Shown in pieces: positions 13,547 to 58,507 of a DNA stretch of 64,000 nucleotides. The stretch's first letter is position 1. The number at the start of each line of letters is the position of its first letter. The stretch lies in IMG/VR virus record IMGVR_UViG_3300003322_000571, positions 124,001 through 188,000 of that record; one strand, 5' to 3'. The notes beneath the pieces are model-generated. The model did no database searches, was not told the origin of the DNA, and worked only from the letters and a program-made list of their open reading frames with translations. The translations under genes and the position numbers were made by a program.

Positions 13547-13575
13547 TTGACGTTTGGCAAAGAAAGCTGGATACT
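13547..13575 (+). promoter_or_regulatory. Sigma70-type promoter
   Basis: TTGACG-17-GATACT; short wobble hairpin AAGCTGG/CTGGCTT. Confidence 0.7.
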
Positions 13576-13605
13576 GGCTTCACTGTCTAAACAAAGGAGT
13601 CCGAG

Positions 13606-14364
13606 ATGGACATCTCTCCGAAGCTGCACAAGATGAACATCAACCACCGGTCGGCGGCTGCTGCTGTGCAGCACACGCGAGATTGGATCGAGGGGATTGT
13701 GGACGGCGACATCGTCGTCAACAACAAGGTGATCGTCGATCCCGCACCTCCGAGCCGTGATGTGATCGCCAACGCGGTCTACTTCGTCAACCATCTGCTC
13801 AGCACCGAGCTGACCACGCAACAACTGGTCGAGCACTACGAGTTGCACAAGACGGAGTCGCGGGCGAAAGCCGATTCGTGGGCGATCACGTTCGCACAGG
13901 CGATCGTCGAGCAACTGGTCAAGGCTGACTGTGTGCTGCTCGCTGGTTCGACCGCTGATCTGATCAAGATGGCGTGGGAACGCGCAACGAAGTCGATCAC
14001 GTGCGCCCGCTATCCCGAAGTGTTCTCGAAGGCAGAAGTCGCTTCGACCACTGGCGGTGAAGTCAAGGCTGTTTCCGACATGGTCGATGTCAAGGTCGAA
14101 GTGAAGGCCGATGGCAAGATCAAGAAGGGCGGCAAGGAGCAGCTGGCGATCGCATTGTACCAGAAGTACGTCGCGTCGCTCAACGGTGCACCGTACGTCA
14201 ACCAGGACTTCATCAAGATCCTCGTCGAAGAGGCTGGCATGACCAAGCCGGGTGCAACGACGTACAACTACAACATGAAGAAGAAGTTCGGTGGTCAGAT
14301 CGAGAAGCGTGCGGACGCTGAGCCGGTTCGCATGCTGGCAGCGCCCAAGAAGAAGGCTGCTTGA
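13606..14364 (+). CDS. Family B protein (C-terminal E.G.T..GA.TY helical domain)
   Basis: EEAGMTKPGATTYNYNMKK; strongly C/G-biased codons. Confidence 0.8.
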   Translation: MDISPKLHKMNINHRSAAAAVQHTRDWIEGIVDGDIVVNNKVIVDPAPPSRDVIANAVYFVNHLLSTELTTQQLVEHYELHKTESRAKADSWAITFAQAIVEQLVKADCVLLAGSTADLIKMAWERATKSITCARYPEVFSKAEVASTTGGEVKAVSDMVDVKVEVKADGKIKKGGKEQLAIALYQKYVASLNGAPYVNQDFIKILVEEAGMTKPGATTYNYNMKKKFGGQIEKRADAEPVRMLAAPKKKAA

Positions 14365-14368
14365 CCTG

Positions 14369-14411
14369 TTGATCAAAATGGTTAGTGAGGGGATGATCTC
14401 TTCACTAACCA
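14369..14411 (+). promoter_or_regulatory. Hairpin-centred promoter
   Basis: TTGATC-17-GATGAT; 14-bp stem 14379-14411 with 2 G-T pairs. Confidence 0.7.
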
Positions 14412-14430
14412 ACTACATCTGTTAGGAGAG

Positions 14431-14895
14431 GTGATGAAATATGTCGTCAGTGTCGCGATCAGCGACCAGATTCCTCATGTCAAGACCACTCTGGCGCGGT
14501 CGGGGATCATCGATGTTTCGTGCGAGCACCAGACCGCTAAGCGTGCAATGGATGATTTCGCCGCAGTGATGACGGCGATTGCTGATCATCCGGGTTCTGG
14601 TCCGTACTGGCAGGTCAACCCGATGCAAGTACTGGACGCGATCCTCAGTCCTCCGCAGGAGAACGAGCAATCGAACGTCAAGATCGAGTTCGAGGCACGT
14701 GACGCCAACGGTGGTCCCACGTTCTCGCTGATCACCGTGGCGCTGAAAAGCGAAGAAGGCGAGACGGCGAACACGACCAATTCGTGCATGCATGCGATGG
14801 CATGCAAGATGCTCGACGTGCTCGAAACCATGATCCACGGTGGTGACCTCCCGACTGAGGAAGCTTCGATCCCTGAAGGTGAAACGATTCACTGA
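14431..14895 (+). CDS. Hypothetical protein
   Basis: GGAGAGG RBS. Confidence 0.75.
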   Translation: MMKYVVSVAISDQIPHVKTTLARSGIIDVSCEHQTAKRAMDDFAAVMTAIADHPGSGPYWQVNPMQVLDAILSPPQENEQSNVKIEFEARDANGGPTFSLITVALKSEEGETANTTNSCMHAMACKMLDVLETMIHGGDLPTEEASIPEGETIH

Positions 14896-14897
14896 TC

Positions 14898-15179
14898 ATG
14901 ATCAAGCTGACCGTTAAGGCAGACTACAAACACCGCCCTCCGGCGGTGTTTTTCGTTACCGGTTACATCGACATGGTGTTCGTGAGCTGGAAGATCCTGT
15001 GGGCACTTACACGGGCTGCTTCCAAGCAGAAAGCGAACATTGTACAGGAAGGTGAGAGCGAAAGCTACGGAGTGCACACACTTCACTTCGTACAAAAGGA
15101 CGGGAACAATTCAACTCCGTTCATTAGCATTGATTTCGAAGAAGTTGACGAGGTCCCCGACGGTTGGGAGCCCACGTAG
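14898..15179 (+). CDS. Hypothetical protein
   Basis: Coupled ORF followed by terminator. Confidence 0.65.
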   Translation: MIKLTVKADYKHRPPAVFFVTGYIDMVFVSWKILWALTRAASKQKANIVQEGESESYGVHTLHFVQKDGNNSTPFISIDFEEVDEVPDGWEPT

Positions 15180-15195
15180 CACACAGCGCCCAGAC

Positions 15196-15228
15196 AAAAG
15201 CCCACCATTGTGTGGGCTTTTTCTTTTG
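15196..15228 (+). terminator. Intrinsic terminator
   Basis: AAAAGCCCAC/GTGGGCTTTT plus T tract. Confidence 0.85.
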
Positions 15229-15471
15229 CAGCTATACAAAAATGCTCCATTGGTTTGAATGCTTGCTCTGAAGACAAACGAGCAGAGACGGATGTCGTTT
15301 CTGCATGATAATGAAATTGTGTGAGCGCAGGAGTCGCTCGGGTCTGTGCGCGATAAGCGTGTCGTTAAGACGGTTTAAAGTGCTCTGTTGTCAAGACTCG
15401 ACAGATGACTGATAGTTCACTCACTGGTTCGGAAACGCAACCGCAGGGACACAAGCAAGAAACTGCTCCTG

Positions 15472-15500
15472 TTGACAAGTTACCCTGAATCAGAGATAGT
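15472..15500 (+). promoter_or_regulatory. Sigma70-type promoter
   Basis: TTGACA-17-GATAGT. Confidence 0.75.
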
Positions 15501-15551
15501 TACCGCACTGAATCAAGTTTCTCTCAACCACCTGTAACAAGGAGTTTCATC

Positions 15552-16196
15552 ATGACCCAAGCCCAAGCCGCTCTGTCGTCCGCCATCGCCCTCCTGGCCA
15601 ACACCGATGCGTTCCGCCCCGTGGCGGCCGACGCCGGTGAAGTCAAGGCGCTCGTCGGCGACAAGATCGTGTTCCTGACCGCCGACAAGAAGGAATCCGA
15701 CGTCCTGACCGTCGTGATGGTCAAAAAGAAGGTGACCAACACCGTGTCCGACGTGAACGGCGAGAAGATGAGCGTGCCGATGACGCACTTCGGCGCCGAC
15801 GACATCGAGCTGGAAGACGGCACGTTCATCCGCCTGGTCAAGTCGGTGATCCCGCCGAAGCCGGGCAAGAAGGGCCGCGGCCGCGTCGAAGGCGCGCCGA
15901 CCAAGGCTGACATCTGCCGCGGCCTGTTCATCGCCGCCCCGGATGCGCCGAAGGCCGTGATGTGCAAGCTGTTCCAGTCGGAAGCCGGCTGCACCCGGAT
16001 GGGCGCGAACACGTACTTCCTGTCGATCGCCAAGGCCTACGCGGCCGGCAAGCTGAAGGACCTCGTTCTGGACGAAGGCGTCGTCGCCCTCGTGAAGAAG
16101 GCGATCGAGGCGGCGCGCGCCGAAGCGGAAGCCCAGGCGGCGGAAGCGTCGGCCGAGACCACGACCGAGCAGTCGACCGAAGAAGCCTCCGCCTGA
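15552..16196 (+). CDS. Family B protein
   Basis: SEAGCTRMGANTYF; acidic Ala/Glu tail. Confidence 0.85.
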   Translation: MTQAQAALSSAIALLANTDAFRPVAADAGEVKALVGDKIVFLTADKKESDVLTVVMVKKKVTNTVSDVNGEKMSVPMTHFGADDIELEDGTFIRLVKSVIPPKPGKKGRGRVEGAPTKADICRGLFIAAPDAPKAVMCKLFQSEAGCTRMGANTYFLSIAKAYAAGKLKDLVLDEGVVALVKKAIEAARAEAEAQAAEASAETTTEQSTEEASA

Positions 16197-16278
16197 TCCT
16201 TGATCGGGTGAAGTGAGAGGGTAGGGGGCATAGCCCCCTTCCTTCGTTGTGTGCATCCACCATTCTACTAGTAAACAT

Positions 16279-16629
16279 ATGCCGATCCTCTCTCAAGATG
16301 AACTGGTGCAACTGATGGTTGCGAATCTGGAAGACGGTACGAAGGAGATCCGCTTCGGTGATCATCTCCGTCCCTATGGAATGATGGATGCGCTCGTGAT
16401 TCGTCGTATCCGCACACCCGCAGGAATCCAGTACTGCGTCCGTGAAACGTCGTACCGCGGCGAAGGCAGCGGCATCTACGACCACGGTGCCGTCGAGATT
16501 GCGAAGTGGGCACGCCGGATCGCTGAACGGTACATGAAACCGCATCAGTCTGTTGTTGTTCAAAAGGTTATCGCTGAAGCTCGTGGCCTCAATGAGCCGA
16601 GCTTCTACGTGACCGAATGCAACACCTGA
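16279..16629 (+). CDS. Hypothetical protein
   Basis: ORF from MPILSQ. Confidence 0.65.
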   Translation: MPILSQDELVQLMVANLEDGTKEIRFGDHLRPYGMMDALVIRRIRTPAGIQYCVRETSYRGEGSGIYDHGAVEIAKWARRIAERYMKPHQSVVVQKVIAEARGLNEPSFYVTECNT

Positions 16630-16895
16630 TCTTCTGCCACGACCGCCAGTACGGCGGTCTCGGTATCCAGTTCGTGATCACCCCGAACGATGTGTTCGAG
16701 GCGACAGGCGAGCTAGTTGCCCACACAGCCCTCCTCCCGGAGGGCTTTCGTCCGTCTCAGTCGTCGAGATGGAAGTACGTGCCCCCGTATGGTACAGCAC
16801 CTGAGTACGGAGTTCAACAGGGCGTGATCGAACTGATCGCTGCTGGAGTCAAATACTCCGAGGCCCTCGATCAATATGTCAACGGGACAACATGA
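16617..16895 (+). CDS. Hypothetical protein
   Basis: Coupled ORF. Confidence 0.6.
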   Translation: MQHLIFCHDRQYGGLGIQFVITPNDVFEATGELVAHTALLPEGFRPSQSSRWKYVPPYGTAPEYGVQQGVIELIAAGVKYSEALDQYVNGTT

Positions 16896-17002
16896 CTGCT
16901 AAACAAGCACTTGAGCGAGCTCGAATGGCTCGTGCTCGGTCGTACTACGTTGCACTGATGAAACAACTTGGTGTGCGCCAGTTGACGTTGTTCCTTGTTT
17001 GA
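16892..17002 (+). CDS. Small basic peptide (36 aa)
   Basis: ATGA overlap; MTAKQALERARMARARSYY... Confidence 0.45.
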   Translation: MTAKQALERARMARARSYYVALMKQLGVRQLTLFLV

Positions 17003-17033
17003 GGGTCTGGGTAAAAATACTCAAAAGTGACCC

Positions 17034-17076
17034 GTTGTTAAGTCACCTAGTTTTACATATAGTTGACTTCAACAAC
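17034..17076 (+). promoter_or_regulatory. Hairpin-enclosed promoter
   Basis: TTGTTA-17-TATAGT; GTTGTTAAGTCA/TGACTTCAACAAC arms. Confidence 0.6.
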
Positions 17077-17112
17077 TGAGGAAATGTTCCTCGCAACGAA
17101 AGGAGAGAGCAA

Positions 17113-17298
17113 ATGCGTCATCCCGCACAGGGCAAACCGAATCGTTCTGAAGAAGGACGTGCCCAACGTGCCGCTCGCCACGCCCGCGCTGGCCGCCTGC
17201 AAGAGGTGCGCAACCGCGAGCTGGAGGCCGCTGACGACGCATTCTCCGATGGTGATCACGAGGCCGATGTCTGGGCCGATGAGCACGAGCTCGCGTGA
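17113..17298 (+). CDS. Small hypothetical protein
   Basis: AAGGAGAG RBS. Confidence 0.7.
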   Translation: MRHPAQGKPNRSEEGRAQRAARHARAGRLQEVRNRELEAADDAFSDGDHEADVWADEHELA

Positions 17299-17309
17299 TC
17301 GTTTCTAGT

Positions 17310-17705
17310 GACCACTAGTAAACATTAAGCCGGGCTTCGTGAGGTGGCCCACCGATGCAGTAATCTTTTGTACGCTCAACATCAGATGACATACGGCATG
17401 AAGGTGCTCAAGTAGCACCTGGGAGGCGCGCCGGCCGGACATACCGCGCCGTGGCCGGCGCGCAACTCCCAAACCTGCACAGCGGCAAGCATTTCGCCCC
17501 GCAACCGACAACCAGTGAGTCACGACATAGTGCGTTACGCATAGGGCTTTTGACATGTGCCCGCCCCGAAGTCTAACCGATGGCCATAGGGTCGCTCGCC
17601 GGGATGAAAGCGAGCACACACTAACCAAGTGGTAACCGAGTGCGCTGGCGACCGGAATTGCTGGCGCATTCAACATTTCCAGACTTCGAATTCAGACTAG
17701 AAAGG
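17310..17705 (+). ncRNA. Structured non-coding RNA or long leader candidate
   Basis: Several strong stems (17402-17420, 17421-17470, 17638-17671 with 4 G-T pairs). Confidence 0.45.
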
Positions 17706-17710
17706 TCTAC

Positions 17711-17893
17711 ATGTCCCGCAATTCCAAGAACGCCAAGCGCCACATCGCCGAGAAGGCCGCCTCCACCCAGCGCGTGAAGGGCGACAAGGGCCCCACCAAG
17801 ACGACGCCGAAGCACGGCAAGAAGAAGGCGTGGTGGCAGCTGTTCCCGTCGTACGAGGCGTACATCAAGGGCGCCAAGAAGCAGAAGGACTAA
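17711..17893 (+). CDS. Small Lys-rich basic protein
   Basis: GPTKTTPKHGKKKAWWQ; strong codon bias. Confidence 0.8.
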   Translation: MSRNSKNAKRHIAEKAASTQRVKGDKGPTKTTPKHGKKKAWWQLFPSYEAYIKGAKKQKD

Positions 17894-17923
17894 GCGGTTC
17901 TCCGCACTGTCGCTGCAGACACT

Positions 17924-17950
17924 AAAGGGCTCAACAGAGCCCTTTTGTTT
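17924..17950. terminator. Bidirectional-type intrinsic terminator
   Basis: AAAGGGCTC-AACA-GAGCCCTTT. Confidence 0.8.
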
Positions 17951-18045
17951 TGTCCGCACTATAAGACAGTGAGGCGCTCTCGCCGTCCATCCCGCGTTAG
18001 CTTCGAATCATGTGGTGATTATATTCGAAAGAGGGTAAAAGTCAA
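17950..18045 (-). ncRNA. Candidate sRNA family X copy 2 with promoter
   Basis: TTGACT-16-TATAAT then CATGATTCGA...GGGATGGACGGCGAGAGCG, running into the terminator. Confidence 0.6.
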
Positions 18046-18079
18046 CGAGAGAATTTGCCGGGCGGCGGGGGCGCCCCCG

Positions 18080-18108
18080 TTGTCAACTTACTCTGGTTGT
18101 GTGATAGT
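18080..18108 (+). promoter_or_regulatory. Sigma70-type promoter
   Basis: TTGTCA-17-GATAGT. Confidence 0.65.
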
Positions 18109-18139
18109 TGACTCATCAGTTAACAACCACGAGAACAAA

Positions 18140-18445
18140 ATGACGTTCGAACAAGAGCTGTCGGTCATCGAACAACTGTTCGGTGTCAAGATCGAAATCC
18201 AAGCCGCGCCGGGTTCGCCTGTGTGGTACACCTTCAGTGGCCGACAGTTGACGGTCGAATGCATCGAGGGCATCATCACGCAGAACAGCGGGGTGCTTGA
18301 GTGGCAAGACCCGTTGTCGTGGCATTGCAACAACAACGACAATGTCGCGTACCTGGTGGTCAAGCTGACCGACACCGATGAAGATGTCGTGTATGATCGG
18401 CTGTTCGCGTTCGACTTGACCGACAACGAATTCCACATTGTCTGA
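18140..18445 (+). CDS. Hypothetical acidic protein
   Basis: ORF from MTFEQEL. Confidence 0.7.
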   Translation: MTFEQELSVIEQLFGVKIEIQAAPGSPVWYTFSGRQLTVECIEGIITQNSGVLEWQDPLSWHCNNNDNVAYLVVKLTDTDEDVVYDRLFAFDLTDNEFHIV

Positions 18446-18466
18446 CAACTGACCGGGGAGGTCAAC

Positions 18467-18736
18467 ATGTTCGCCTTCGCCTATGCGGTGTACAGCCGCA
18501 ATCAAGCCCAGCCTCCGCACATTGTTGTCGGTGGCAGTGGCATGGAGTGCGTCAACCGCATCAAGCCGTACATCGAACGCCTGCTCGAGGATGAGCACAA
18601 GGAACGTTTCGGTGGCAATGCAGTCAAGACCGCATACGAAGACCTCAAGCAGGTCGGCACGGTCGCTGAGCTGGAGGTGTTTCTCAGCCGGTGGCTGCCG
18701 TATCGCGGCATGCTGGTTTCCGACCAGATCAAGTAA
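18467..18736 (+). CDS. Hypothetical protein
   Basis: GGAGG RBS. Confidence 0.75.
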   Translation: MFAFAYAVYSRNQAQPPHIVVGGSGMECVNRIKPYIERLLEDEHKERFGGNAVKTAYEDLKQVGTVAELEVFLSRWLPYRGMLVSDQIK

Positions 18737-18898
18737 CGAGTGCCCTGTTGATCCCACGTGGGATCTTTGGGATAGTACACACATCGCGAGCGCAAACAAC
18801 AAAGCGCTTGCGAGACGGACAGAATCAAAACTGACCCGTTGTCCAGAAACGAAATTGTGGGATAGTAGACACATCCCAACGCAACCAGGAGAGATGAA

Positions 18899-19537
18899 AT
18901 GACCACGCTGATCCAAACCCTGTTCGCTGCCAACGAAGGCCGCACCGTCGAAGCGAACAACGACCAGAACAAGGGCATCTTCAAGGTCGCCAAGCTGGCC
19001 GACAAGATCGGCACGATGAAGAACGGCGACAAGGCCGAGTACGTCGTGCTGACGAACGAGAACGACGAAGCGGTCGTCATCATGCTCCACCCGAACGTCG
19101 CCAAGAGCCTGTTCGAGAAGGGCGAAGACGCCAAGACCGGCTACAAGATGGTGCCCGTCGAGACGACCGACGAGCAGACCGTCACGACCGCTGAAGTCGG
19201 TGGTGCCCCCGCGGAAGTGATCCTGGCGACGTCGGAAGGCGAAGTGCTCGCCGCTGTCCCCGCCGGCACGACCGAAGAAGCGTCCGCTGAAACGGCTCCG
19301 GAAGACAACGGTGCCGCCGAAGCGAGCACGGAAACGACCGAAGCTGCCGCGGAAGAGCCGAAGGAGCCGTCGAAGAAGGAGCTGACGATCGCTCTGGTGC
19401 ACGCCGGCTGGGATGCCAAGCTCGCGCGCAAGGACATCATCGCCAAGATGATCGCCGAAATCGGCATGAGCGGCCCCTGCGCGAACACGTACTACCAGAA
19501 CGTGAAGTCGGGCACCTGGGGCGGCCGTAAGGGCTAA
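18899..19537 (+). CDS. Family B protein
   Basis: AEIGMSGPCANTYYQNVK after an Ala/Glu/Thr linker. Confidence 0.85.
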   Translation: MTTLIQTLFAANEGRTVEANNDQNKGIFKVAKLADKIGTMKNGDKAEYVVLTNENDEAVVIMLHPNVAKSLFEKGEDAKTGYKMVPVETTDEQTVTTAEVGGAPAEVILATSEGEVLAAVPAGTTEEASAETAPEDNGAAEASTETTEAAAEEPKEPSKKELTIALVHAGWDAKLARKDIIAKMIAEIGMSGPCANTYYQNVKSGTWGGRKG

Positions 19538-19546
19538 TCCCCACGC

Positions 19547-19573
19547 CAAGAGGGCTTCGGCCCTCTTGCTTTG
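19547..19573 (+). terminator. Intrinsic terminator (UUCG loop)
   Basis: CAAGAGGGC-TTCG-GCCCTCTTG. Confidence 0.8.
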
Positions 19574-19626
19574 ACAAGCGTATTGGTATACAGTACGCTT
19601 ATCCAAGCAACTCTCAAGGACATATC

Positions 19627-19836
19627 ATGCCTTTGACGTGGTACATCGTTTTCTCGCTGCTGATGTCGTTCTGCGTGCTGTTCGCTTCGAAGCCGGGGAC
19701 GACTGGCATCCTGATCAAGCTCGCCGCCATCGTCCACATTGCGCTGTCGCTGTGGACTCTCCACCAAAACCACGACCTCGTCAAGCAAGCGCATCTCTTC
19801 GCTGAGAAGCTGCCGAGCGTCACGATCGAGAAGTGA
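19627..19836 (+). CDS. Small membrane protein
   Basis: Two hydrophobic helices; AAGGA RBS. Confidence 0.7.
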   Translation: MPLTWYIVFSLLMSFCVLFASKPGTTGILIKLAAIVHIALSLWTLHQNHDLVKQAHLFAEKLPSVTIEK

Positions 19837-19843
19837 GGGCAAC

Positions 19844-19999
19844 ATGCTCCCCGTCAAGATCAAACAGCCGCTGGAACGGCTCGAGAAGATGGTGCTCGTC
19901 AGCATCTACGAGGGCAAGCGTCTGCTCGGCTGGCGCTTGGTCAAAGCGCGCAAGACCGGCAACGAGTATCGCATTCCTCACGACTCACGTTGCAAGTGA
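19844..19999 (+). CDS. Small basic protein
   Basis: GAGG RBS. Confidence 0.55.
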   Translation: MLPVKIKQPLERLEKMVLVSIYEGKRLLGWRLVKARKTGNEYRIPHDSRCK

Positions 20000-20003
20000 T
20001 ACC

Positions 20004-20744
20004 ATGAACAACATCAAAGACATGCTCCAGTTCGACGGCGTGGCCGCTGCTGAGGATATGACCGGGCGCAGTGCTCGTTTCGACGAGAATACCGGTTTGT
20101 TGGCGCTCGCTCTGTCGGTAGCGCACAACGATGCGCTGTCCAAGGCTCTGGCGTCCGAGGACGACACGCAGTACAACAACAAGCTGACCAACTACCAGCG
20201 GATCATCACCAGCATGGGGTTCGAGCTCGCGCTGCGCACTCCGTTCGTCGGTCAGGCGTGGGGTGATGAGCCTGTACCGGATGAAGCGCAGTACATCTAC
20301 GCGCACCGTGCCGGCATGCTGCTGATCTTCGATACGTACGGAGGCGACAGCGTCAACTCCGCCAAGGTGTACTACGCGCACCGTCCTCACCAGCTCTCGA
20401 GCTGTCATTACAGCAGCGGTGGCTGGTACTCTGCAGAAGAATGGAAGGATTCACGTTATCCTTCTGACATGTGGTGGTTTGGCGATCACGATGCACGGGT
20501 CGCTCTCCGTCACACGATTCGGCGGCTGCACGATAGTGGGCAATTCCTGACTCCGTGGCCGAAGCCGCATAGCACGCGCAGCTCTCCGTCGGTCTGGATG
20601 TGCCATTACATGGACCACAAGAAGTTGGACAAGTTGGGCAGTCCGGAGTACAAGGAGGCGATCCGCAATGCGGAGGCCAGGCTCCATCAACTCCCGGATT
20701 GGGTCAAGGAGATGATTTCCCCGGTCCTTCCCGTCCAGGACTGA
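20004..20744 (+). CDS. Hypothetical protein
   Basis: Long ORF with phage-like codon use. Confidence 0.75.
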   Translation: MNNIKDMLQFDGVAAAEDMTGRSARFDENTGLLALALSVAHNDALSKALASEDDTQYNNKLTNYQRIITSMGFELALRTPFVGQAWGDEPVPDEAQYIYAHRAGMLLIFDTYGGDSVNSAKVYYAHRPHQLSSCHYSSGGWYSAEEWKDSRYPSDMWWFGDHDARVALRHTIRRLHDSGQFLTPWPKPHSTRSSPSVWMCHYMDHKKLDKLGSPEYKEAIRNAEARLHQLPDWVKEMISPVLPVQD

Positions 20745-20803
20745 CTCGACGACGAGGACGAAGATCAAGGGTGATATTACCCAGTTGATTTCCACAATGA
20801 GAC

Positions 20804-20830
20804 AGGGGAGCGTTAACGCTCCCCTTCCTA
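20804..20830 (+). terminator. Terminator-like hairpin
   Basis: AGGGGAGCG-TTAA-CGCTCCCCT. Confidence 0.65.
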
Positions 20831-20850
20831 TTACAACTGCAGAGGTCCTT

Positions 20851-21129
20851 GTGGAAGCAACACTTGACGAGAAGTTCGTCGGCACCGTGAGGTCGCCGAT
20901 TGAATCATTCTGGCAGGGTTGTACGCTGAAGAAGGCCGCTGATGCGGAGCACTTCTTTGACGTGCCGAATGTCGATGCGATAGGCTATTGCCTTGACCAC
21001 AACCACTTTTCCAGTCTGTCCCCAGAAGCAAAGCGGCTGATCCACCGTGTGATCGATATCTACGGCCGCCATGCTGTCTGCGATTATCTGGCTGACCACA
21101 TCAAGCTGGTCAAGCAGAAAACACACTGA
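20851..21129 (+). CDS. Hypothetical protein
   Basis: GAGG RBS, GTG start. Confidence 0.6.
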   Translation: MEATLDEKFVGTVRSPIESFWQGCTLKKAADAEHFFDVPNVDAIGYCLDHNHFSSLSPEAKRLIHRVIDIYGRHAVCDYLADHIKLVKQKTH

Positions 21130-21622
21130 TGTCCTGTTTGCACTTGTTGCACTGATACGCCTTGCCCTTGCGGGCTTGCGTATGCTGATAGTACGACAGT
21201 TGGTGCGACATACAGCCACAGTTCCACAGGTACGTCTTGACGGTTTTCGCCGTGTCGTACCTGTGCGTGATCTCAGCCTTCGCTTCGAATAGCTTCATCA
21301 TCGACTGCCATTCCCGTCCATGCTGGAAAGGGACGTTGCCGTTGATGTCTTGCACGATCAAGTGCGCCAGCTCATGCGGAACGCTGTTCGCGATGTACGC
21401 GTCAGTGTTGTCCCGCAGGTAAATCATGTTCAAATCGATCGTGCGCGTAGCGTATTCGGCGTAGCCTGCGCTCGCACCACGGATACGATACACGATATTC
21501 GGACGTTCGACAACGATGCGGAGCTCCCGCTCAGCGATCGCGATCAGGTTGTCAACGCGGGCATTGACCCGCTTTTGTAGTTCCAGCTTAGTCACATTTA
21601 ACTCCCTGGCGAACTGCCCCAT
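21110..21622 (-). CDS. sprT: SprT-like zinc metalloprotease
   Basis: PHELAH, HG.EW, C-terminal CGC...CNKC zinc motif. Confidence 0.85.
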   Translation of the reverse strand: MGQFARELNVTKLELQKRVNARVDNLIAIAERELRIVVERPNIVYRIRGASAGYAEYATRTIDLNMIYLRDNTDAYIANSVPHELAHLIVQDINGNVPFQHGREWQSMMKLFEAKAEITHRYDTAKTVKTYLWNCGCMSHQLSYYQHTQARKGKAYQCNKCKQDISVFSA

Positions 21623-21818
21623 TATTGTTATTGAGCAGGACGCAATGTAACGATGCAAATACGTGGTTTACGATGTGGTCTGTAAAAATAATTTGGTGTA
21701 TAACAACCAGTTCAATCGATGACGATGTCGCTAGCGAACGTTATTGACCAATGAAATAAAAGTTGCCGAAAGGGTGAAACAGCGTTGATCAAACCGCGTG
21801 GTTCAAGTAGCTGCCTCG

Positions 21819-21926
21819 TTGATCTTTACCCTAACTAGTCAGATAGTGTGCTTCATGCGATAGGGATTCGTTGTTGAGAAGCAGCTACAACTGCTAATCA
21901 ACATTCAAACGAGTTAGCGATCGCAT
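21819..21926 (+). promoter_or_regulatory. Promoter plus long hairpin 5' leader
   Basis: TTGATC-17-GATAGT; 72-nt four-segment hairpin 21855-21926. Confidence 0.65.
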
Positions 21927-21970
21927 CAGTCCTCTTCTTTTGTGTTCGTCAATCTTTGAAAGGAATCATC

Positions 21971-22426
21971 ATGAGCAACGTCACCGAAAAGGGCCTCATC
22001 GTTCTGAAGGCCGCTTCCAAGCACAACACGCGCGAGAAGATCGCCCGCCGCCTCGGCCAAAGCGTCGCCCAAGTCAACGGCGCCCTGACCGGTCTCAAGC
22101 GCAACGGCCTGATCGAGATCGATGCCGAAGGCGTGATCACCGTGACCCCCGACGCCGCTCCCTACCTGAGCAAGCGCGCCGGTGGCACCGCTGAACGCGC
22201 CACCCGCACCAACACGAAGATGGCCGCTGCGCGTCGCCTGTTCGACAAGTACGCGTCGAAGGAAGGTCGTGGCGGTCTGATCGCTCGCTTCATGAAGGAG
22301 ATCGGCCTGACCGAGAAGGGCGCGTCGACCTACTTCCAGACGATCCGTGTGCAGGCCGGTGTGCCGGCGGGCGCTTTCCAGCGTGCTCCGCGCAAGCCTT
22401 CGACCGTTTCGCGCAAGACGTCGTGA
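21971..22426 (+). CDS. Family B protein with N-terminal HTH
   Basis: REKIARRLGQSVAQVNGALTGLKRNGLI (winged-HTH-like) plus KEIGLTEKGASTYFQ. Confidence 0.8.
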   Translation: MSNVTEKGLIVLKAASKHNTREKIARRLGQSVAQVNGALTGLKRNGLIEIDAEGVITVTPDAAPYLSKRAGGTAERATRTNTKMAAARRLFDKYASKEGRGGLIARFMKEIGLTEKGASTYFQTIRVQAGVPAGAFQRAPRKPSTVSRKTS

Positions 22427-23816: not shown

Positions 23817-23820
23817 ACTG

Positions 23821-52098: not shown

Positions 52099-52353
52099 AG
52101 GTTTTGTATGTTGATGACACAATACACGTACTTGCTGTGGCAAGATGACCGTGGAACACACATCAAACTGATGCATAAAGAACTGCAAGAGAAAGTCAAG
52201 CATTTCTTCATCGCTGGACAGCGAGATCCTGGTCCAATTCATTCCCATATGCGCAGCCTTACTGATGAACTGTGTGACGGATTCTTCCCTGATCCAAACC
52301 GTCGTAAGAAGAAAGAGAAGAAGCCAAAAGAGGAAACTGTTGAGGTCAAATAA
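52096..52353 (+). CDS. Hypothetical protein, basic tail
   Basis: ORF. Confidence 0.6.
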   Translation: MRFCMLMTQYTYLLWQDDRGTHIKLMHKELQEKVKHFFIAGQRDPGPIHSHMRSLTDELCDGFFPDPNRRKKKEKKPKEETVEVK

Positions 52354-52385
52354 CTTGCCACTATAATTGCGGTAAGTTAAATCTC

Positions 52386-56528: not shown

Positions 56529-56553
56529 AAGCCGGTTTGACCGGCTTTTTTTG
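56529..56553 (+). terminator. Intrinsic terminator
   Basis: AAGCCGGT/ACCGGCTT plus T tract. Confidence 0.85.
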
Positions 56554-56606
56554 TTGTTCGGTATTGGGTTCATTGTTACAATGTTGGTTCTTTACAGGAG
56601 TATTCT

Positions 56607-56780
56607 ATGCAAGTGTACGAATCGAATCTTTCAGCTGCTTTGTCAGTCGCAATTGCAGAACGCCGTAAGGTAGAAGCTCAACTTGGATATACGGGCGACT
56701 CAGCGTTTGTTGCTGGTCTCGTACAAGTGCTAGAGGCATTCGAGCGCGGTGAACACATTGAAATCGTTCGAGGAGCCTAA
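56607..56780 (+). CDS. Small hypothetical protein (57 aa)
   Basis: AGGAG RBS; MQVYESNLSAAL... Confidence 0.6.
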   Translation: MQVYESNLSAALSVAIAERRKVEAQLGYTGDSAFVAGLVQVLEAFERGEHIEIVRGA

Positions 56781-56845
56781 TATGACGCTCGACGATCTGT
56801 ATCCACAACGAAAGATTTGCCGTCTCCTGCAACGACCTTCACAAT

Positions 56846-57715
56846 ATGAACAACATCAACGACATTCCTCTTCAAACGACCAGCAACCTACTCAACGCGT
56901 TCCCGTCCAATCTCCAGAAGAGAGATCCGTGGCCACGAAAGGTTCCTGTTGGTATTGAGGTGGAAGTTCCTTGGCGTGGTTATTTTCCGGATTTGTGGGT
57001 AGACGGGTTTCCAAATGTAGATGAAGAAACTCTTGCACGAATCACTGAGGAATGCACTAAGCGTGAGGAAACACTTATTCCTAAGCTGCGTAAAACGCAA
57101 GAATGTGGCGTGAAACGAGGTGCTGACAAGTACTGGGAATTCGCATTCGATCCTGTCACAGATGTTCGTATCACGTGCGACCATGTTGAGATTCTCCGTC
57201 AGCATAATCTGATTCCTGAAGGGCCGCATTCTTTACACATTACGTTTGGTGGCTTGCGAGCTACTCGTGACATGCATTACGTTGCAATGATTCTCGAGTG
57301 TTTTGCTTGTTCTCCTGAGCGAATTTTGTCGGGATTCCATCCAACGAGCGAAGCACAATCTGTTGGGTGGGCTCGTAAGGGATTTGCTGGTCTATTTGAA
57401 AAGACAGGTTCTCATGATCTTTTGCACGGATATCAATACGGTTGTGAGATCCGGCTACTGACCCTACCACAGACAGACGATGAATTGTTCTATCTGCTCG
57501 ACATTGGTCAGTGTTTTGCCGTACTTGCATTGAACAAAGATCCAATGTGGACGAGGATTCGTGATACGTTGAAAATGATTCTGTTGAAGAACGGACTTCC
57601 AGATGAGAACTGGAAGAAGCCACATATTAACCCTGAACTGTGGAAGGATGTTGCTGAAAAGTGGCCTGCAGTTCAAGCCAAGGTTGTAGACTTCATCTCT
57701 GACGTCTACCCTTAA
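56846..57715 (+). CDS. Putative amidoligase (GS/GCS2-fold)
   Basis: VGIEVEV...WEF...HITFG...CEIR pattern. Confidence 0.55.
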   Translation: MNNINDIPLQTTSNLLNAFPSNLQKRDPWPRKVPVGIEVEVPWRGYFPDLWVDGFPNVDEETLARITEECTKREETLIPKLRKTQECGVKRGADKYWEFAFDPVTDVRITCDHVEILRQHNLIPEGPHSLHITFGGLRATRDMHYVAMILECFACSPERILSGFHPTSEAQSVGWARKGFAGLFEKTGSHDLLHGYQYGCEIRLLTLPQTDDELFYLLDIGQCFAVLALNKDPMWTRIRDTLKMILLKNGLPDENWKKPHINPELWKDVAEKWPAVQAKVVDFISDVYP

Positions 57716-57742
57716 TGACTAGCCTATATACTGGAGTAATGG

Positions 57743-58003
57743 ATGGAAACCACCAAGACGGATTTGATTGCCATTGTTGAGAGCGTATGGGGCGTTCAAC
57801 CGATGGAAGTGGTTGAGGAGTTGTTGTTTTCAACGACAGCTTTTCCATTCGCTCCGGTTGAGAAGATTGCAGTCCAGTTGAAAGAGTACTTCGACCGAAG
57901 CGGTGGTAATCCCGGTAAAGCGATCAATCTTGCGTACGAAGATTTTGATAGGGAATGGGAAGAATACAAAGCGAGGGAGAAGGAAAATGAAGAATCGAGT
58001 TAG
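57743..58003 (+). CDS. Hypothetical protein
   Basis: GGAG RBS; LF.TTAFPF. Confidence 0.75.
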   Translation: METTKTDLIAIVESVWGVQPMEVVEELLFSTTAFPFAPVEKIAVQLKEYFDRSGGNPGKAINLAYEDFDREWEEYKAREKENEESS

Positions 58004-58106
58004 GGAAAAGTTTGGATTGGTGTTCGTGATCGCAGTTGTTATTGCGTCGTGTGCAGCCGCATACGTATCAGCCCTGCATTAATTGCCGTATTTGTTTGGG
58101 TGACAA

Positions 58107-58114
58107 TATAAATA
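58107..58114 (+). promoter_or_regulatory. T4 gp55-type late promoter (TATAAATA)
   Basis: Perfect consensus 27 nt upstream of ATG 58142. Confidence 0.65.
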
Positions 58115-58141
58115 TGCCCAACAAATATAGGAACACCAATC

Positions 58142-58444
58142 ATGGAATTTCTGAGGGAACTGCTAAGCGAGAGTAAGAAGGACAAGAATAAAGCTCCTGT
58201 CCTTAAGATGTTGCCAATCAAGTCATTCGTGGCTGGTAATATGGTTACGTCTAATCCAGAAGATGATGAGTGTGAATCTGTGACAGAAGGTAAAGACAAA
58301 GTGAAAGTACCGGTTTCAAAGCCACGCGCCAAGGACATCAACGATGCTCTCGTTCACACGAAGAGTGGTCGCCACTATGATCCAAAGCGTGATTATGTCC
58401 GCGCGAAGGAGAAGTCGCGTAGCCGTAAGGAAATGCAAGACTAA
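58142..58444 (+). CDS. Basic late (possibly virion) protein
   Basis: MEFLRELLSE start; late promoter. Confidence 0.75.
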   Translation: MEFLRELLSESKKDKNKAPVLKMLPIKSFVAGNMVTSNPEDDECESVTEGKDKVKVPVSKPRAKDINDALVHTKSGRHYDPKRDYVRAKEKSRSRKEMQD

Positions 58445-58453
58445 ACCCTTTAG

Positions 58454-58507
58454 TTGAACAACTAAACAACCCTCAGTATAGTGTATGCAAGTACATTACT
58501 GAGGGTT
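58454..58507 (+). promoter_or_regulatory. Promoter with RBS-sequestering hairpin
   Basis: TTGAAC-17-TATAGT; AACCCTCAGTA/TACTGAGGGTT covers the GAGGG RBS. Confidence 0.75.

What the first reader, a model, noticed from the sequence alone, without database searches (positions are those of the whole stretch)
13547..58507. Early promoters are built as covarying hairpins centred on the -10 box
Seen: at least 25 promoters with correct 16-17 bp spacing have their spacer complementary to the sequence just after the -10. The arms differ in sequence but always pair: GATGGGAGTA/TACTCCCATC, GATGCGTC/GACGCATC, ACGAGTGCGT/ACGCACTCGT, TGCGACGACTA/TAGTCGTCGCA, ATCTAGTTGAGTG/CACTCAACTAGAT, TGGTTAGTGA/TCACTAACCA, AAGGTGAGAGT/ACTCTCACCTT, ATTGTTAC/GTAACAAT. 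Non-Watson-Crick positions are almost all G-T on the + strand (14379, 23836, 30779, 31103, 31934, 33347, 33708, 34846, 37462, 42481). This points to folding of the non-template strand or read-through RNA, not a dsDNA palindrome for a dimeric protein. Inference: a structure-encoded regulatory layer such as read-through insulation, RNase III processing, cruciform-assisted melting, or synchronous shut-off of all early promoters. Caveat: some wobbles are forced by the -10 consensus itself.
Basis: partly seen in the sequence, partly recalled or inferred. Interest (0 to 1): 0.88.

Follow-up and report, generated by a model that had tools for sequence, protein, structure and literature searches.

The report
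Stem-loops embedded in phage early promoters
Nearly half of the roughly sixty host-type promoters heading the small early genes of this uncultured 350-kb phage carry a hairpin-forming inverted repeat across their -10 box; this is real, but it matches the 'promoter-early stem-loop' (PeSL) cassettes already described in T4-like phages.

Summary
The hairpins are real. A position-weight scan finds 63 sigma-70-type promoter sites on the + strand. Of these, 28 fold better than shuffles that keep the -35 and -10 boxes (z<-2) and 22 reach z<-3. Each spacer pairs far better with its own downstream sequence than with another promoter's (permutation z=11.3). The claim is overstated, though. About 55% of these promoters have no such hairpin. 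Some junctions carry the stem-loop upstream of or over the -35 box. Related phages with the same promoter type have different arms (L010) or none (L011, L099). The G-T argument does not hold: the strand asymmetry disappears once the conserved TGG/-10 core is masked. The anatomy is stop codon, -35, 17 bp, -10, stem-loop, Shine-Dalgarno, ATG, repeated before unrelated ORFan genes in a plastic region. That is the published PeSL cassette of T4-like phages, a composite promoter and attenuator. I read the stem-loop as acting on read-through RNA from the upstream gene, not on initiation. It sits over the -10 because the spacer and the discriminator are the only freely variable sequence in a roughly 55-nt junction. 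It lacks a U-tract, so it is not a canonical terminator. Verdict: a new member of a known kind, of moderate to low interest.

The parts
13162..37505 (+). Array of about 54 sigma-70-type promoter modules (upstream stop codon, CC(C/T)G, TTGACa, 17 bp, (TGG)GATAcT or TATTAT, NNNNNCATC, GGAG, ATG), each heading a small gene of 40-250 aa. It is densest from 22.6 to 37.5 kb and lies in the GC-rich block.
   Evidence: PWM scan; gene and promoter table; stop-to-ATG gaps of 38-139 nt (median 59 for hairpin modules); GC profile; consensus scan 46 sites against 9.1 expected.
14369..14411 (+). Promoter with a hairpin at 14379-14411 (15-bp stem including 2 G-U, 3-nt loop inside the -10 GATGAT).
   Evidence: dG -21.7, z -5.0; z -7.5 with strand folding.
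19566..19603 (+). Promoter with a hairpin at 19573-19603. A GC-rich stem-loop at 19547-19568 also precedes it and overlaps the -35.
   Evidence: z -5.2; upstream stem-loop dG -15.9.
23062..23098 (+). Promoter with the ATGGGAGTA/TACTCCCAT hairpin at 23078-23098 (3-nt loop, -10 TATTAT).
   Evidence: z -4.8; repeat family D1.
23576..23618 (+). Promoter with a weak hairpin, TTGTGCA/TGCACAA. A 12-bp outer helix pairs the upstream gene end and -35 with the Shine-Dalgarno region.
   Evidence: z -2.4; outer helix.
23821..23862 (+). Promoter with the GATGGGAGTA/TGCTCCCATC hairpin (one G-U), extended to about 19 bp with bulges.
   Evidence: dG -19.5, z -3.4.
25631..25662 (+). Promoter-like site whose spacer holds the hairpin GCTAGTGTCC/GGACACTAGT. 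The putative -10 lies in the 3' arm.
   Evidence: dG -17.9, z -7.4.
25801..25842 (+). Promoter-like site with a weak hairpin, TCGGAGT/ATTCCGA.
   Evidence: z -2.2.
28077..28120 (+). Promoter with the GATGGGAGTA/TACTCCCATC hairpin at 28092-28114.
   Evidence: dG -15.8, z -3.9; z -5.5 as RNA and -6.2 as DNA; sequence.
28348..28389 (+). Promoter (-35 TTGCCT) with the ATGGGAGTA/TACTCCCAT hairpin at 28364-28384.
   Evidence: z -4.7.
28552..28592 (+). Promoter with the TAAGATGGGAT/ATCCCATCTTA hairpin at 28567-28592. The register is shifted, with half of the -10 in the 5' arm.
   Evidence: dG -15.0, z -4.6.
28946..28988 (+). Promoter with the ATGGGAGTA/TACTCCCAT hairpin at 28962-28982.
   Evidence: z -4.9.
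30058..30098 (+). Promoter with only a weak, interrupted hairpin. It lies 11 nt downstream of the canonical terminator at 30021-30047.
   Evidence: z -2.1; terminator (D9).
30770..30807 (+). Promoter with the GATGCGTC/GACGCATC hairpin at 30779-30807. It is extended by G-U pairs through TGGTG/TACTG.
   Evidence: dG -18.2, z -4.2.
31096..31137 (+). Promoter with the GACGAGTGCGT/ACGCACTCGT hairpin. The helix continues into the -35 (TTGTT/AACAA).
   Evidence: dG -24.4, z -7.2 (I1, 25, 92).
31919..31963 (+). Promoter with the GTTGGTGGGA/TCCCATCAAC hairpin. It shares a 39-nt identical segment with module 31671, although the genes that follow are unrelated.
   Evidence: z -2.6; repeat D2; no paralogy.
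32234..32274 (+). Promoter with the TGGGATGGGAGTA/TACTCCCATCTTA hairpin.
   Evidence: dG -18.2, z -4.5.
32647..32681 (+). Promoter with the TGCGACGACTA/TAGTCGTCGCA hairpin. The 5' arm overlaps the last codons and stop codon of the upstream ORF.
   Evidence: z -4.1; stop codon position.
32988..33028 (+). Promoter with the AGCTT/AAGCT core hairpin plus an outer helix AACAAT/ATTGTT.
   Evidence: z -4.1.
33341..33381 (+). Promoter with the GGATCCGT/ACGGATC hairpin (15 bp including 3 G-U).
   Evidence: dG -19.4, z -6.7.
33697..33732 (+). Promoter with the TGCGTTC/GGACGCA hairpin (G-U containing).
   Evidence: z -2.9.
33984..34019 (+). Promoter with the 8-bp TGGGAGTA/TACTCCCA hairpin (borderline z).
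   Evidence: z -2.0; simple-hairpin dG -10.3.
34256..34291 (+). Promoter with the 8-bp TGGGAGTA/TACTCCCA hairpin (borderline z).
   Evidence: z -1.8; dG -10.3.
34544..34577 (+). Promoter with the hairpin TGAGTGTTGTTC/GGACAATACTCA, with the -10 in the 3' arm. A GC stem-loop at 34526-34545 also overlaps the -35.
   Evidence: z -3.1.
34833..34875 (+). Promoter with the TGATAGGTGGG/CTCACTTATCA hairpin.
   Evidence: z -3.7.
35388..35429 (+). Promoter with a two-helix hairpin (GTGCAA..TTGCAC outside, TGGTA..TACCA inside).
   Evidence: dG -14.6, z -6.4.
35932..35972 (+). Promoter with the ATTGTTAC/GTAACAAT arms and a 12-nt loop holding the whole -10. It is energetically weak.
   Evidence: Present in the sequence; z only -1.1.
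36295..36339 (+). Promoter with the nested helices CTCACA/TGTGAG and GGTGGGA/TCCCATC. The 3' arm reaches the Shine-Dalgarno sequence.
   Evidence: dG -18.9, z -5.0; Shine-Dalgarno unpaired probability 0.00 in read-through RNA against 0.50 in its own transcript.
37457..37498 (+). Promoter with the ATCTAGTTGAGTG/CACTCAACTAGAT hairpin.
   Evidence: dG -23.5, z -6.0 (I9, 25, 92, 93).
41689..41725 (+). Promoter with the ATGGGTA/TACCCAT hairpin followed by CTTTTGA. It is the only promoter hairpin with a partial T-run.
   Evidence: z -2.0; listed as terminator-like.
45478..45513 (+). AAGGTGAGAGT/ACTCTCACCTT stem followed by TTTTCTTTTATT. This is an ordinary intrinsic terminator. The promoter assignment over it is weak (PWM 13.5).
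52340..52379 (+). Promoter-like site (TTGAGG, 16 bp, TATAAT) with the TAACTTGCC/GGTAAGTTA hairpin.
   Evidence: z -4.3.
26234..26262 (+). Perfect 13-bp stem-loop whose 3' arm is the -35 region (GCCCTGTTGCCTT) of promoter 26256. This is an example of the stem-loop placed over the -35 rather than the -10.
   Evidence: dG -23.2 (I7, 59, 60).
31385..31401 (+). GC stem-loop AGGGGGC/GCCCCCT abutting the -35 of promoter 31401. The orthologous junction in L011 has a GC stem-loop plus a 22-bp hairpin running from the -35 to the Shine-Dalgarno sequence.
29369..29395 (+). Canonical intrinsic terminator (11-bp stem followed by a T-run) 13 nt upstream of promoter 29408, which has no -10 hairpin.
   Evidence: (D9).
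22447..22469 (+). Canonical intrinsic terminator (10-bp GC-rich stem followed by TTTTTATTT). Others of the same type lie at 14928, 15196, 17924, 27320, 52069, 56529 and 62369.

Best explanation
These are PeSL-type cassettes (promoter-early stem-loops). Each is a compact intergenic module: the stop codon of the upstream gene, a host sigma-70-type promoter, a stem-loop, a Shine-Dalgarno sequence and the start codon of a small ORFan gene. The module is repeated about 50 times in a plastic early region of an uncultured 350-kb phage (IMGVR_UViG_3300003322_000571, positions 114001-178000).

Shown: the promoter consensus, the module anatomy, the statistical reality of the hairpins, their variable register and position, their lineage-specific arm sequences, and the absence of a U-tract.

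Inferred: host RNA polymerase starts at the A of the conserved CATC, about 7 nt after the -10. That places the start inside the 3' arm, so a module's own transcript never contains the hairpin. Only RNA reading through from the upstream gene folds it. There it would act as an attenuator, pause site or 3'-exonuclease barrier that gives the upstream mRNA a defined, protected 3' end and limits read-through, promoter occlusion and run-on expression across the tandem promoters. This is the role shown by reporter assay for the RB49 PeSL stem-loop.

The hairpin sits over the -10 because the junction is only about 40-70 nt long. The -35, -10, start site and Shine-Dalgarno sequence are fixed, which leaves the 17-nt spacer and the discriminator/5'UTR as the two free segments, and these flank the -10.

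The shared module sequences probably also serve as recombination sites that shuffle ORFan cassettes.

I give about 0.8 to the classification as PeSL-type modules and about 0.5 to the RNA-level attenuator/3'-end mechanism.
For: The module anatomy and spacing are regular. The stop codon ends 4 nt before the -35, or lies inside it, in most modules. The ATG lies 24-33 nt after the -10.

The hairpins are real and promoter-specific, and the - strand control is clean.

The position is flexible. The centre ranges from -3 to +7. Of 29 strong junction stem-loops, 8 lie upstream of or over the -35. This matches the five positional subclasses of PeSLs (PMC2839356).

Junction windows are enriched for stem-loops of -8 kcal or better: 61% against 29% of background windows.

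Promoters just downstream of a canonical terminator carry the hairpin less often: 2/10 against 26/53, one-sided Mann-Whitney p=0.056.

The same promoter class works without hairpins in relatives (L011 0/17, L099 0/6), while L010 has 14/26 with different arms.

Within one register class drawn from three phages, 97.5% of cells pair and 9 of 11 pairs change on both sides (this set was selected for pairing).

Module repeats of 29-69 nt precede unrelated genes.

The window and L010 are collinear, with ORFan insertions, deletions and replacements between anchor genes.

In RB49 a PeSL stem-loop cut downstream lacZ expression about as strongly as rrnB T1.
Against: There are no transcript data for this phage or any relative, so start sites and 3' ends are inferred.

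The hairpins have on average 1.7 T in the 8 nt after the stem, while the window's canonical terminators have 6-9 T in 11 nt. Efficient intrinsic termination by E. coli-type polymerase is therefore not expected.

The sense-strand preference expected for an RNA element is not demonstrable once the conserved core is masked.

Fewer than half of the junctions have the -10 hairpin. Relatives that lack it do not clearly compensate with upstream stem-loops (L011 5/17 against 13% background), so any function is dispensable.

The terminator/hairpin complementarity is only a trend (Fisher p=0.16).

The hairpin centre follows the -10 (sd 1.9 nt) more closely than the midpoint between stop codon and Shine-Dalgarno sequence (sd 8.1 nt). 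This also fits a promoter-linked role.

Nine copies share one exact 19-21-bp palindrome, which could equally be a protein site.
Confidence: 0.55

Rival explanations
1. By-product without a function of its own. The inverted repeats arise and spread by recombination or gene conversion among the repeated promoter modules (concerted evolution). They persist because the spacer and the discriminator are the only unconstrained segments.
For: Hairpins are absent from 55% of promoters, and from all promoters of the same class in L011 and L099. Each phage has its own dominant arm family: nine ATGGGAGTA/TACTCCCAT-type copies in the window and about seven GGTGAGACC/GGTCTCAYC copies in L010. Identical 29-39-nt module segments precede unrelated genes.
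Against: At least 15 different arm sequences in the window each keep complementarity. Paralogous modules with 70-87% identity show matched changes in both arms (D4/D5). Permutation z is 11.3. Random duplication does not create inverted complementarity across a conserved -10. The 26603 module shows that the arms can decay, which implies the others are maintained.
Confidence: 0.15
2. Operator palindromes. A phage-encoded dimeric DNA-binding protein recognises the dominant palindrome across the -10 and switches that promoter subset off, or on, together.
For: Nine promoters share an exact 17-21-bp palindrome centred on the -10 in one register (centre 3.0). It is conserved more strictly than their -35 boxes. 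L010 has a different dominant palindrome, as would be expected if protein and site co-evolve.
Against: The other roughly 19 hairpin promoters have unrelated arms and registers from -3 to +7, so one protein cannot read them all. Loops of 6-13 nt and stems that depend on G-T pairs are poor double-stranded DNA palindromes. No candidate regulator was identified; the ORFs have no family matches.
Confidence: 0.12
3. DNA-level switch. Negative supercoiling extrudes the inverted repeat as a cruciform that removes the -10 from duplex DNA or changes -35/-10 geometry, making these promoters sensitive to supercoiling.
For: Both strands fold as DNA (dG -5.5 to -12 kcal per arm). Twelve of 21 strong hairpins have 3-nt loops. 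The AT-rich -10 sits at the centre, and the centre tracks the -10 closely (sd 1.9 nt). From my own knowledge: an engineered E. coli promoter is repressed by cruciform extrusion (Horwitz and Loeb 1988), and phage N4 early promoters are DNA hairpins.
Against: Watson-Crick arms are mostly 8-11 bp, which is short for extrusion. Many hairpins reach short loops only through G-T pairs, which would be mismatches in one arm and A-C in the other. The register varies. Stem-loops placed upstream of or over the -35 and hairpin-free relatives show that the promoter class does not need the structure.
Confidence: 0.1
4. RNase III (or other double-strand-specific) processing sites that cut the polycistronic early RNA into single-gene messages, as in the T7 early region.
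For: The position is intergenic, between every pair of early genes. A few stems reach 15-22 bp when the -35/5'UTR complementarity is included (31096, 37457, 23821 and L011 9738). The -35 region is generically complementary to a conserved 5'UTR motif (z 5.8 against shuffles).
Against: Most stems are 8-13 bp, below the roughly two helical turns of typical RNase III substrates (my own knowledge). The outer helix shows no promoter-specific covariation (permutation z 1.5). No Rfam family matches.
Confidence: 0.05

Closest known systems
PeSLs (promoter-early stem-loops) of T4-like phages RB49/phi1, T4/PST and KVP40/nt-1 (Arbiol et al. 2010, PMC2839356; Comeau et al. 2014, PMC4122927)
   Same: [quoted passage not shown] The promoter is sigma-70-like with a 17-bp spacer. 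The stem-loop sits most often between the -35 and -10 or over the -10, but also over or upstream of the -35, and the published figure marks G-T pairs. The modules form dense arrays before ORFans in a plastic region. Module sequences are repeated before unrelated genes. Related genomes differ by ORFan insertions, deletions and replacements between modules (searches compared).
   Different: There is no AT-rich stretch upstream of the -35 (42.5% AT against 45.1% for the region), because the upstream stop codon abuts or overlaps the -35. The stems are not Gn-loop-Cn or another single consensus but at least 15 different arm pairs. The -10 consensus is (TGG)GATAcT as often as TATnAT. The host phage is an uncultured 350-kb genome whose relation to T4-like phages is unresolved. 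Attenuator activity, promoter activity and mini-circles are untested here.
Rho-independent (intrinsic) terminators
   Same: A stable stem-loop just after a stop codon. The window has at least 10 textbook examples, so the host polymerase evidently uses them.
   Different: The promoter hairpins have no U-tract (mean 1.7 T in the 8 nt after the stem) and overlap an active-looking promoter.
Phage N4 early promoters, which are DNA hairpins read by the virion RNA polymerase (from my own knowledge)
   Same: Early promoters that contain a short hairpin with a 3-nt loop.
   Different: N4 sites have no -35/-10 boxes, a 5-7-bp stem and conserved flanks, and are read by a phage polymerase. Here the sigma-70 boxes are the conserved part, the arms vary, and more than half of the promoters lack a hairpin.
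Cruciform-regulated promoter (Horwitz and Loeb 1988, engineered lac promoter; from my own knowledge)
   Same: An inverted repeat lying between and over the promoter hexamers.
   Different: That was an engineered case with a longer perfect palindrome. Here the arms are short, often depend on G-T pairs, and vary in register.
T7 early-region RNase III sites and REP-type 3' stabiliser hairpins
   Same: Intergenic stem-loops in polycistronic early RNA that define or protect mRNA ends.
   Different: The stems here are much shorter than RNase III substrates, they overlap promoters, and no processing data exist.

Membership tests
PeSL (promoter-early stem-loop) cassette | Sigma-70-like -35 and -10 hexamers with a spacer of about 17 bp, repeated many times | tested here: met
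   63 PWM sites against 1-3 in shuffled sequence. 46 consensus sites against 9.1 +/- 3.1 expected. The spacer is 17 bp in 57 of 63 sites.
PeSL (promoter-early stem-loop) cassette | A stable stem-loop inside or next to the promoter, in one of several positions (between -35 and -10, over the -10, over the -35, or upstream) | tested here: met
   28 of 63 sites have z<-2. 21 strong stem-loops lie over the spacer and -10, and 8 lie over or upstream of the -35. Registers are given.
PeSL (promoter-early stem-loop) cassette | [quoted passage not shown] | tested here: met
   (gaps of 38-139 nt). Genes are 41-252 aa, almost none with a family match, and they are unrelated to one another.
PeSL (promoter-early stem-loop) cassette | [quoted passage not shown] | tested here: not met
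   The 20 nt upstream of the -35 are 42.5% AT against 45.1% for the region. The consensus there is CC(C/T)G. This trait is described for RB49/phi1. I treat it as accessory rather than defining, because the 2014 paper accepts PeSLs with other consensus sequences.
PeSL (promoter-early stem-loop) cassette | Association with insertions, deletions and replacements of ORFans between related genomes | tested here: inconclusive
   The window and L010 share about 15 collinear anchor genes, with different numbers of unrelated ORFs between them. One interval is 10 kb in the window and 2.1 kb in L010. The genomes are too diverged (25-74% amino-acid identity) to place breakpoints inside modules.
PeSL (promoter-early stem-loop) cassette | The stem-loop attenuates transcription from upstream, the module drives strong early transcription, and mini-circles form by recombination between modules | not testable with these tools
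   This needs reporter assays, RNA end mapping, and inverse PCR or read-pair analysis.
PeSL (promoter-early stem-loop) cassette | Carried by a T4-like myovirus | tested here: inconclusive
   The window holds no T4 hallmark gene. A 60%-identical homologue of one array gene lies beside a T4-type replication module in L015. The window's own contig was not among the 80 best DNA-polymerase matches.
Intrinsic terminator | GC-rich stem immediately followed by a U-tract | tested here: not met
   Mean 1.7 T (maximum 4) in the 8 nt after 21 promoter hairpins. True terminators in the window have 6-9 T in 11 nt. The exceptions are 45483-45510 (a true terminator) and 41706-41725 (a partial T-run).
Operator for one dimeric repressor | One shared palindromic sequence in a fixed register | tested here: not met
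   At least 15 arm sequences with centres from -3 to +7. It is met only for the nine-member ATGGGAGTA/TACTCCCAT subfamily.
RNase III processing site | Roughly 20 bp or more of near-continuous duplex | tested here: not met
   Stems are 8-17 bp with a median of 10-11. Only three or four junctions reach 19-22 bp.
N4-type hairpin promoter | Hairpin with conserved flanks in place of -35/-10 boxes, read by a virion RNA polymerase | tested here: not met
   The conserved elements are the sigma-70 boxes, the hairpin arms vary, and the hairpin is absent from 55% of sites. The definition of the family is from my own knowledge.

The most novel reading that the evidence does not exclude
The tight centring on the -10 (sd 1.9 nt) and the exact conservation of one palindrome in nine promoters reflect a DNA-level or protein-mediated control layer. 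In this reading a phage-specific factor, or supercoil-driven extrusion, reads the hairpin or palindrome across the -10 and coordinates the switching of a defined subset of early promoters, with specificity co-evolving between related phages (different dominant arms in L010). This would go beyond the attenuator and recombination roles proposed for PeSLs.
Probability: 0.12. Interest if true: 0.7.

Novelty: new member of a known kind. Interest (0 to 1): 0.35.

Why it matters
PeSLs have so far been documented only in a few cultured T4-like phages. How a stem-loop without a U-tract attenuates transcription, and whether it really drives cassette shuffling, is still unsettled. This window and its relatives offer a natural comparison set. 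One promoter architecture occurs with one arm family (the window), with another arm family (L010), and with no hairpin (L011, L099). There are also more than 15 naturally 'compensated' arm variants. That makes the attenuator, operator and cruciform hypotheses easy to separate with synthetic reporters. Practically, it warns annotators that inverted repeats over -10 boxes in phage ORFan arrays are a recurrent module and not a new regulatory principle. It also provides compact promoter/insulator parts of 40-70 nt.

Tried and rejected
1. Shine-Dalgarno sequestration in read-through RNA. The unpaired probability of the Shine-Dalgarno sequence is 0.40 in read-through RNA, 0.39 with a shuffled upstream part and 0.53 in the module's own transcript. 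It is not a general feature, although it is clear at 23576, 29408, 35388 and 36295.

2. An outer helix between the -35 region and a conserved 5'UTR motif (TCAAC/GTYAAC). It is better than shuffles (z 5.8) but shows no promoter-specific covariation (permutation z 1.5). I treat it as two conserved motifs that happen to be complementary.

3. Column-wise mutual information over 105 anchored promoters gave no anti-diagonal signal, because the registers vary.

4. G-T against A-C counts. Strict internal mismatches are 5 against 2. The chimera baseline is and the masked-core folding. None gives a robust strand asymmetry, although unmasked hairpins favour the + strand (window 13 against 4, L010 9 against 0).

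5. Looking for close relatives by DNA. There was no megablast hit in cultured phages. The 21-nt palindrome finds only the window's own contig in IMG/VR and one chance hit in metagenomes (L009, 35% GC, no promoters).

6. More distant relatives (L005-L008, L015-L018, L100, L101) have no comparable arrays.

7. Complementarity between canonical terminators and promoter hairpins is only a trend. My first strict terminator detector missed several terminators.

8. Intergenic length does not differ significantly between hairpin and non-hairpin modules (median 59 against 66.5 nt, p=0.19).

9. Placing the phage taxonomically failed: a phosphatase tblastn was uninformative and the DNA-polymerase scan did not return the window's contig.

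10. Rfam found nothing but two tRNAs.

Full report
WHAT THE WINDOW IS. The 64-kb window is positions 114001-178000 of an uncultured viral contig of 350,089 bp, IMGVR_UViG_3300003322_000571. It has no close DNA relative among cultured phages. The left end carries a tail-fibre gene and leftward genes. A non-coding gap of about 1.3 kb (10.25-11.5 kb) separates them from a long rightward array of small genes, and two tRNA genes lie at 60.2-60.5 kb. The stretch from 12 to 38 kb is 54-58% GC, against 45-50% elsewhere. This is where the finding is concentrated.

CHECK OF THE OBSERVATION. I started from obvious sites and refined a two-block weight matrix. It finds 63 promoter-like sites on the + strand from 13.1 kb onward, against 1-3 in shuffled sequence. 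An independent consensus scan gives 46 sites against 9.1 +/- 3.1 expected in 13-33 kb.

The consensus is CC(C/T)G, TTGACa, 17 bp, then (TGG)GATAcT or TATTAT, then NNNNNCATC, then GGAG, then ATG. The ATG lies 24-33 nt after the -10. The upstream gene's stop codon ends 4 nt before the -35, or inside the -35 or spacer, in most modules, so the stop-to-ATG gaps are only 38-139 nt.

I folded spacer + -10 + 16 nt against 200 shuffles that keep both hexamers. This gives z<-2 for 28 of 63 sites and z<-3 for 22 of 63. The strand folding reproduces the energies, with z of -4.8 to -7.5 for six hairpins and +0.9 and -0.7 for two promoters without one.

The best contiguous helix between a spacer and its own downstream segment averages 6.79. 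For spacer-i/downstream-j mismatches it averages 5.08 (permutation z 11.3). Thirty PWM hits on the - strand, which are presumably spurious, have mean z -0.14.

So the core observation is right and far beyond chance. But 35 of 63 promoters lack the hairpin, and the 45470 example is simply an intrinsic terminator with a T-run.

COVARIATION. There is no fixed-column covariation, because the hairpin centre ranges from -3 to +7 relative to the first base of the -10 hexamer. There are two favoured registers, 0-0.5 and 3. Accordingly, mutual information over 105 anchored promoters shows nothing.

Within one register class (11 modules from three phages), 97.5% of cells pair, against 29-54% when the partner is slid. 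Nine of 11 pairs change on both sides. That set was chosen for pairing, so the count is descriptive.

The less biased evidence is the permutation test, together with paralogous modules of 70-87% identity whose two arms change together. In families D4 and D5, the arm pairs are GATGCGTC/GACGCATC, GGATCCGT/ACGGATC and GACGAGTGCGT/ACGCACTCGT. Their sibling 26603 has lost pairing.

THE G-T ARGUMENT. If helices are extended through wobbles, there are 29 G-T against 10 A-C, and the + strand folds 1.6 kcal better than the - strand. However:
- Strictly internal mismatches are 5 against 2.
- Chimeric promoters show a compositional offset of 0.84 kcal, not significantly different from the real one (p=0.18).
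- When the 6 nt before the hexamer, the hexamer and one further base are forced unpaired, the asymmetry vanishes (n=16, -10.1 against -8.9 kcal, p=0.19).

The sequence therefore cannot decide between RNA and DNA folding.

WHERE ELSE STEM-LOOPS SIT. I scanned from 40 nt upstream of the -35 to +18. In this scan 61% of promoter windows contain a simple hairpin of -8 kcal or better, and 54% one of -10 or better. In background windows of the same block the figures are 29% and 11.5%.

Of the 29 strong hairpins, 21 span the spacer and -10. Eight lie upstream of or over the -35. Examples are the perfect 13-bp stem at 26234-26262, whose 3' arm is the -35 region, the GC stems at 19547, 31385 and 34526 that run into the TTG of the -35, and the true terminators at 29369 and 30021.

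The window also has at least 10 textbook terminators with 6-9 T in 11 nt. The promoter hairpins have 1.7 T in the 8 nt after the stem, so they are not canonical intrinsic terminators.

Promoters that closely follow a canonical terminator carry the -10 hairpin less often (2/10 against 26/53). This is a trend only (Mann-Whitney p=0.056, Fisher p=0.16).

RELATIVES. The 171-aa product of 29488-30003 has homologues of 60-74% identity in Logan assemblies. Their contigs show the same architecture of small rightward genes with gaps of about 60 nt, and the same promoter class.
- L010 (32-kb contig): 14 of 26 promoters have z<-3, but with other arms, dominated by GGTGAGACC/GGTCTCAYC and GATGAGGCT/AGCCTCATC.
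- L013 and L014: 2 of 7.
- L011 and L012: 0 of 17.
- L099: 0 of 6.
- L011 has only a weak excess of upstream stem-loops (5/17 against 13% background).

So the hairpin is an evolutionarily labile accessory of this promoter class, not a requirement for it.

The window and L010 share about 15 collinear anchor genes, with different numbers of unrelated ORFs between them. One interval is 10 kb in the window and 2.1 kb in L010. Inside the window's array the genes are almost all unrelated to each other, yet module segments of 29-69 nt recur. These include a 39-nt identical stretch, running through the Shine-Dalgarno sequence and ATG, before two unrelated genes.

More distant relatives lack such arrays. 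One of them (L015) places the homologue next to a T4-type replication module. Whether the window's phage is T4-like remains open.

WHAT IT IS. The anatomy matches the promoter-early stem-loops (PeSLs) of T4-like phages point by point. These run from the upstream stop codon through a sigma-70-like promoter and a stem-loop to the Shine-Dalgarno sequence and start codon. [quoted passage not shown] PeSLs occur in dense arrays before ORFans in hyperplastic regions and are associated with insertions and deletions between related phages. One stem-loop reduced downstream lacZ expression as strongly as rrnB T1 (PMC2839356; PMC4122927).

The differences here are as follows. There is no AT-rich stretch upstream of the -35. 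The arms are many and unrelated rather than a Gn/Cn-type consensus. The -10 consensus is G-started and TGG-extended. The carrier is an uncultured 350-kb phage.

HOW IT MOST LIKELY WORKS. The predicted start is the A of CATC, 7 nt after the -10, which lies inside the 3' arm. A module's own mRNA therefore lacks the 5' arm, and only read-through RNA from the upstream gene can fold the hairpin. I infer that the stem-loop marks and protects the 3' end of the upstream message and damps read-through and promoter occlusion along some 50 tandem promoters, as proposed and partly shown for PeSLs.

The centring on the -10 is tight: mean offset -0.7 nt with sd 1.9, against sd 8.1 relative to the midpoint between stop codon and Shine-Dalgarno sequence. 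The module's constraints explain this. The spacer and the discriminator/5'UTR are the only free segments, and they flank the -10.

The weak points are the missing U-tract, the absence of any transcript data, and the dispensability of the hairpin in relatives. I put 0.8 on the classification and about 0.5 on this mechanism.

RIVALS.
- Neutral by-product of concerted evolution of the modules (0.15).
- An operator for a phage regulator, at least for the nine-copy exact palindrome (0.12).
- A supercoil-driven cruciform switch (0.10). Both strands fold as DNA, but the Watson-Crick arms are short and the register varies.
- RNase III sites (0.05). The stems are too short.

Shine-Dalgarno sequestration in read-through RNA was tested and rejected as a general rule.

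VERDICT. The feature is real and well supported. Its description as a universal, -10-centred, G-T-marked design is overstated, and it belongs to an already described kind of phage element. It is a new member in a new lineage, and useful as a natural test set for how PeSL stem-loops work.

Noticed in passing
window 10250-11500: A non-coding gap of about 1.3 kb between the leftward and rightward gene blocks. It holds a 33-nt direct repeat (10374 and 10473), CCCTATAGGG-type palindromes including a perfect 16-nt inverted repeat (10917-10932 / 10961-10976), a 16-nt exact repeat (10723 and 10860), and divergent promoter-like sites (- strand 11254 and 11487; + strand 11176 and 11342). It may be an origin or a regulatory hub.
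   Followed up: partly
window 12000-38000: This block is 54-58% GC against 45-50% in the rest of the window. It coincides with the hairpin-promoter ORFan array. Relative to L010, part of it (31.7-41.7 kb) is a roughly 8-kb expansion.
   Followed up: partly
window, -35 regions and +8..+16 of the 5'UTRs of the array: The conserved cYGTTGAC around the -35 is complementary to a conserved 5'UTR motif (TCAAC / GTYAAC, sometimes CAACAGGAG including the Shine-Dalgarno sequence). It scores better than shuffles (z 5.8) but is not promoter-specific. In a few junctions (23576, 29408, 36295; L011 9738; L010 9657) the whole promoter lies inside a 12-22-bp helix.
   Followed up: yes
window 43220-45462 (+) and 7999-9759 (-): Four tandem paralogues (191, 202, 200 and 159 aa; phrog_889) lie on the + strand, and three tandem paralogues (phrog_17693) lie on the - strand. 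Their function is unknown.
   Followed up: no
window 23880-24275 and 24284-24529; L010 3876-4130; L011 4641-5048: Small proteins with a prepilin-type N-terminal methylation motif (N_methyl / pilin-like PHROGs) are conserved in the early arrays of the window phage and its relatives. They may interfere with the host's type IV pili or type II secretion.
   Followed up: no
L015 1-8900: A 60%-identical homologue of the array gene 29488-30003 lies next to a T4-type replication module: clamp loader gp44/gp62, RegA, DNA polymerase B, UvsX split by a homing-endonuclease-like ORF, and a DnaB-like helicase. This hints that the gene pool is shared with T4-like phages.
   Followed up: partly
window 27450-27478 and 27765-27793; 31690-31728 and 31938-31976: There are exact 29-nt and 39-nt duplications of promoter-module segments in front of unrelated genes. 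This suggests recent recombination or gene conversion between modules.
   Followed up: partly
window 58445-58507: A further promoter-like site (TTGAAC, 17 bp, TATAGT) has arms CCCTCAGTA/TACTGAGGG around an 18-nt loop. The weight matrix missed it, so the census of hairpin promoters is a lower bound.
   Followed up: no
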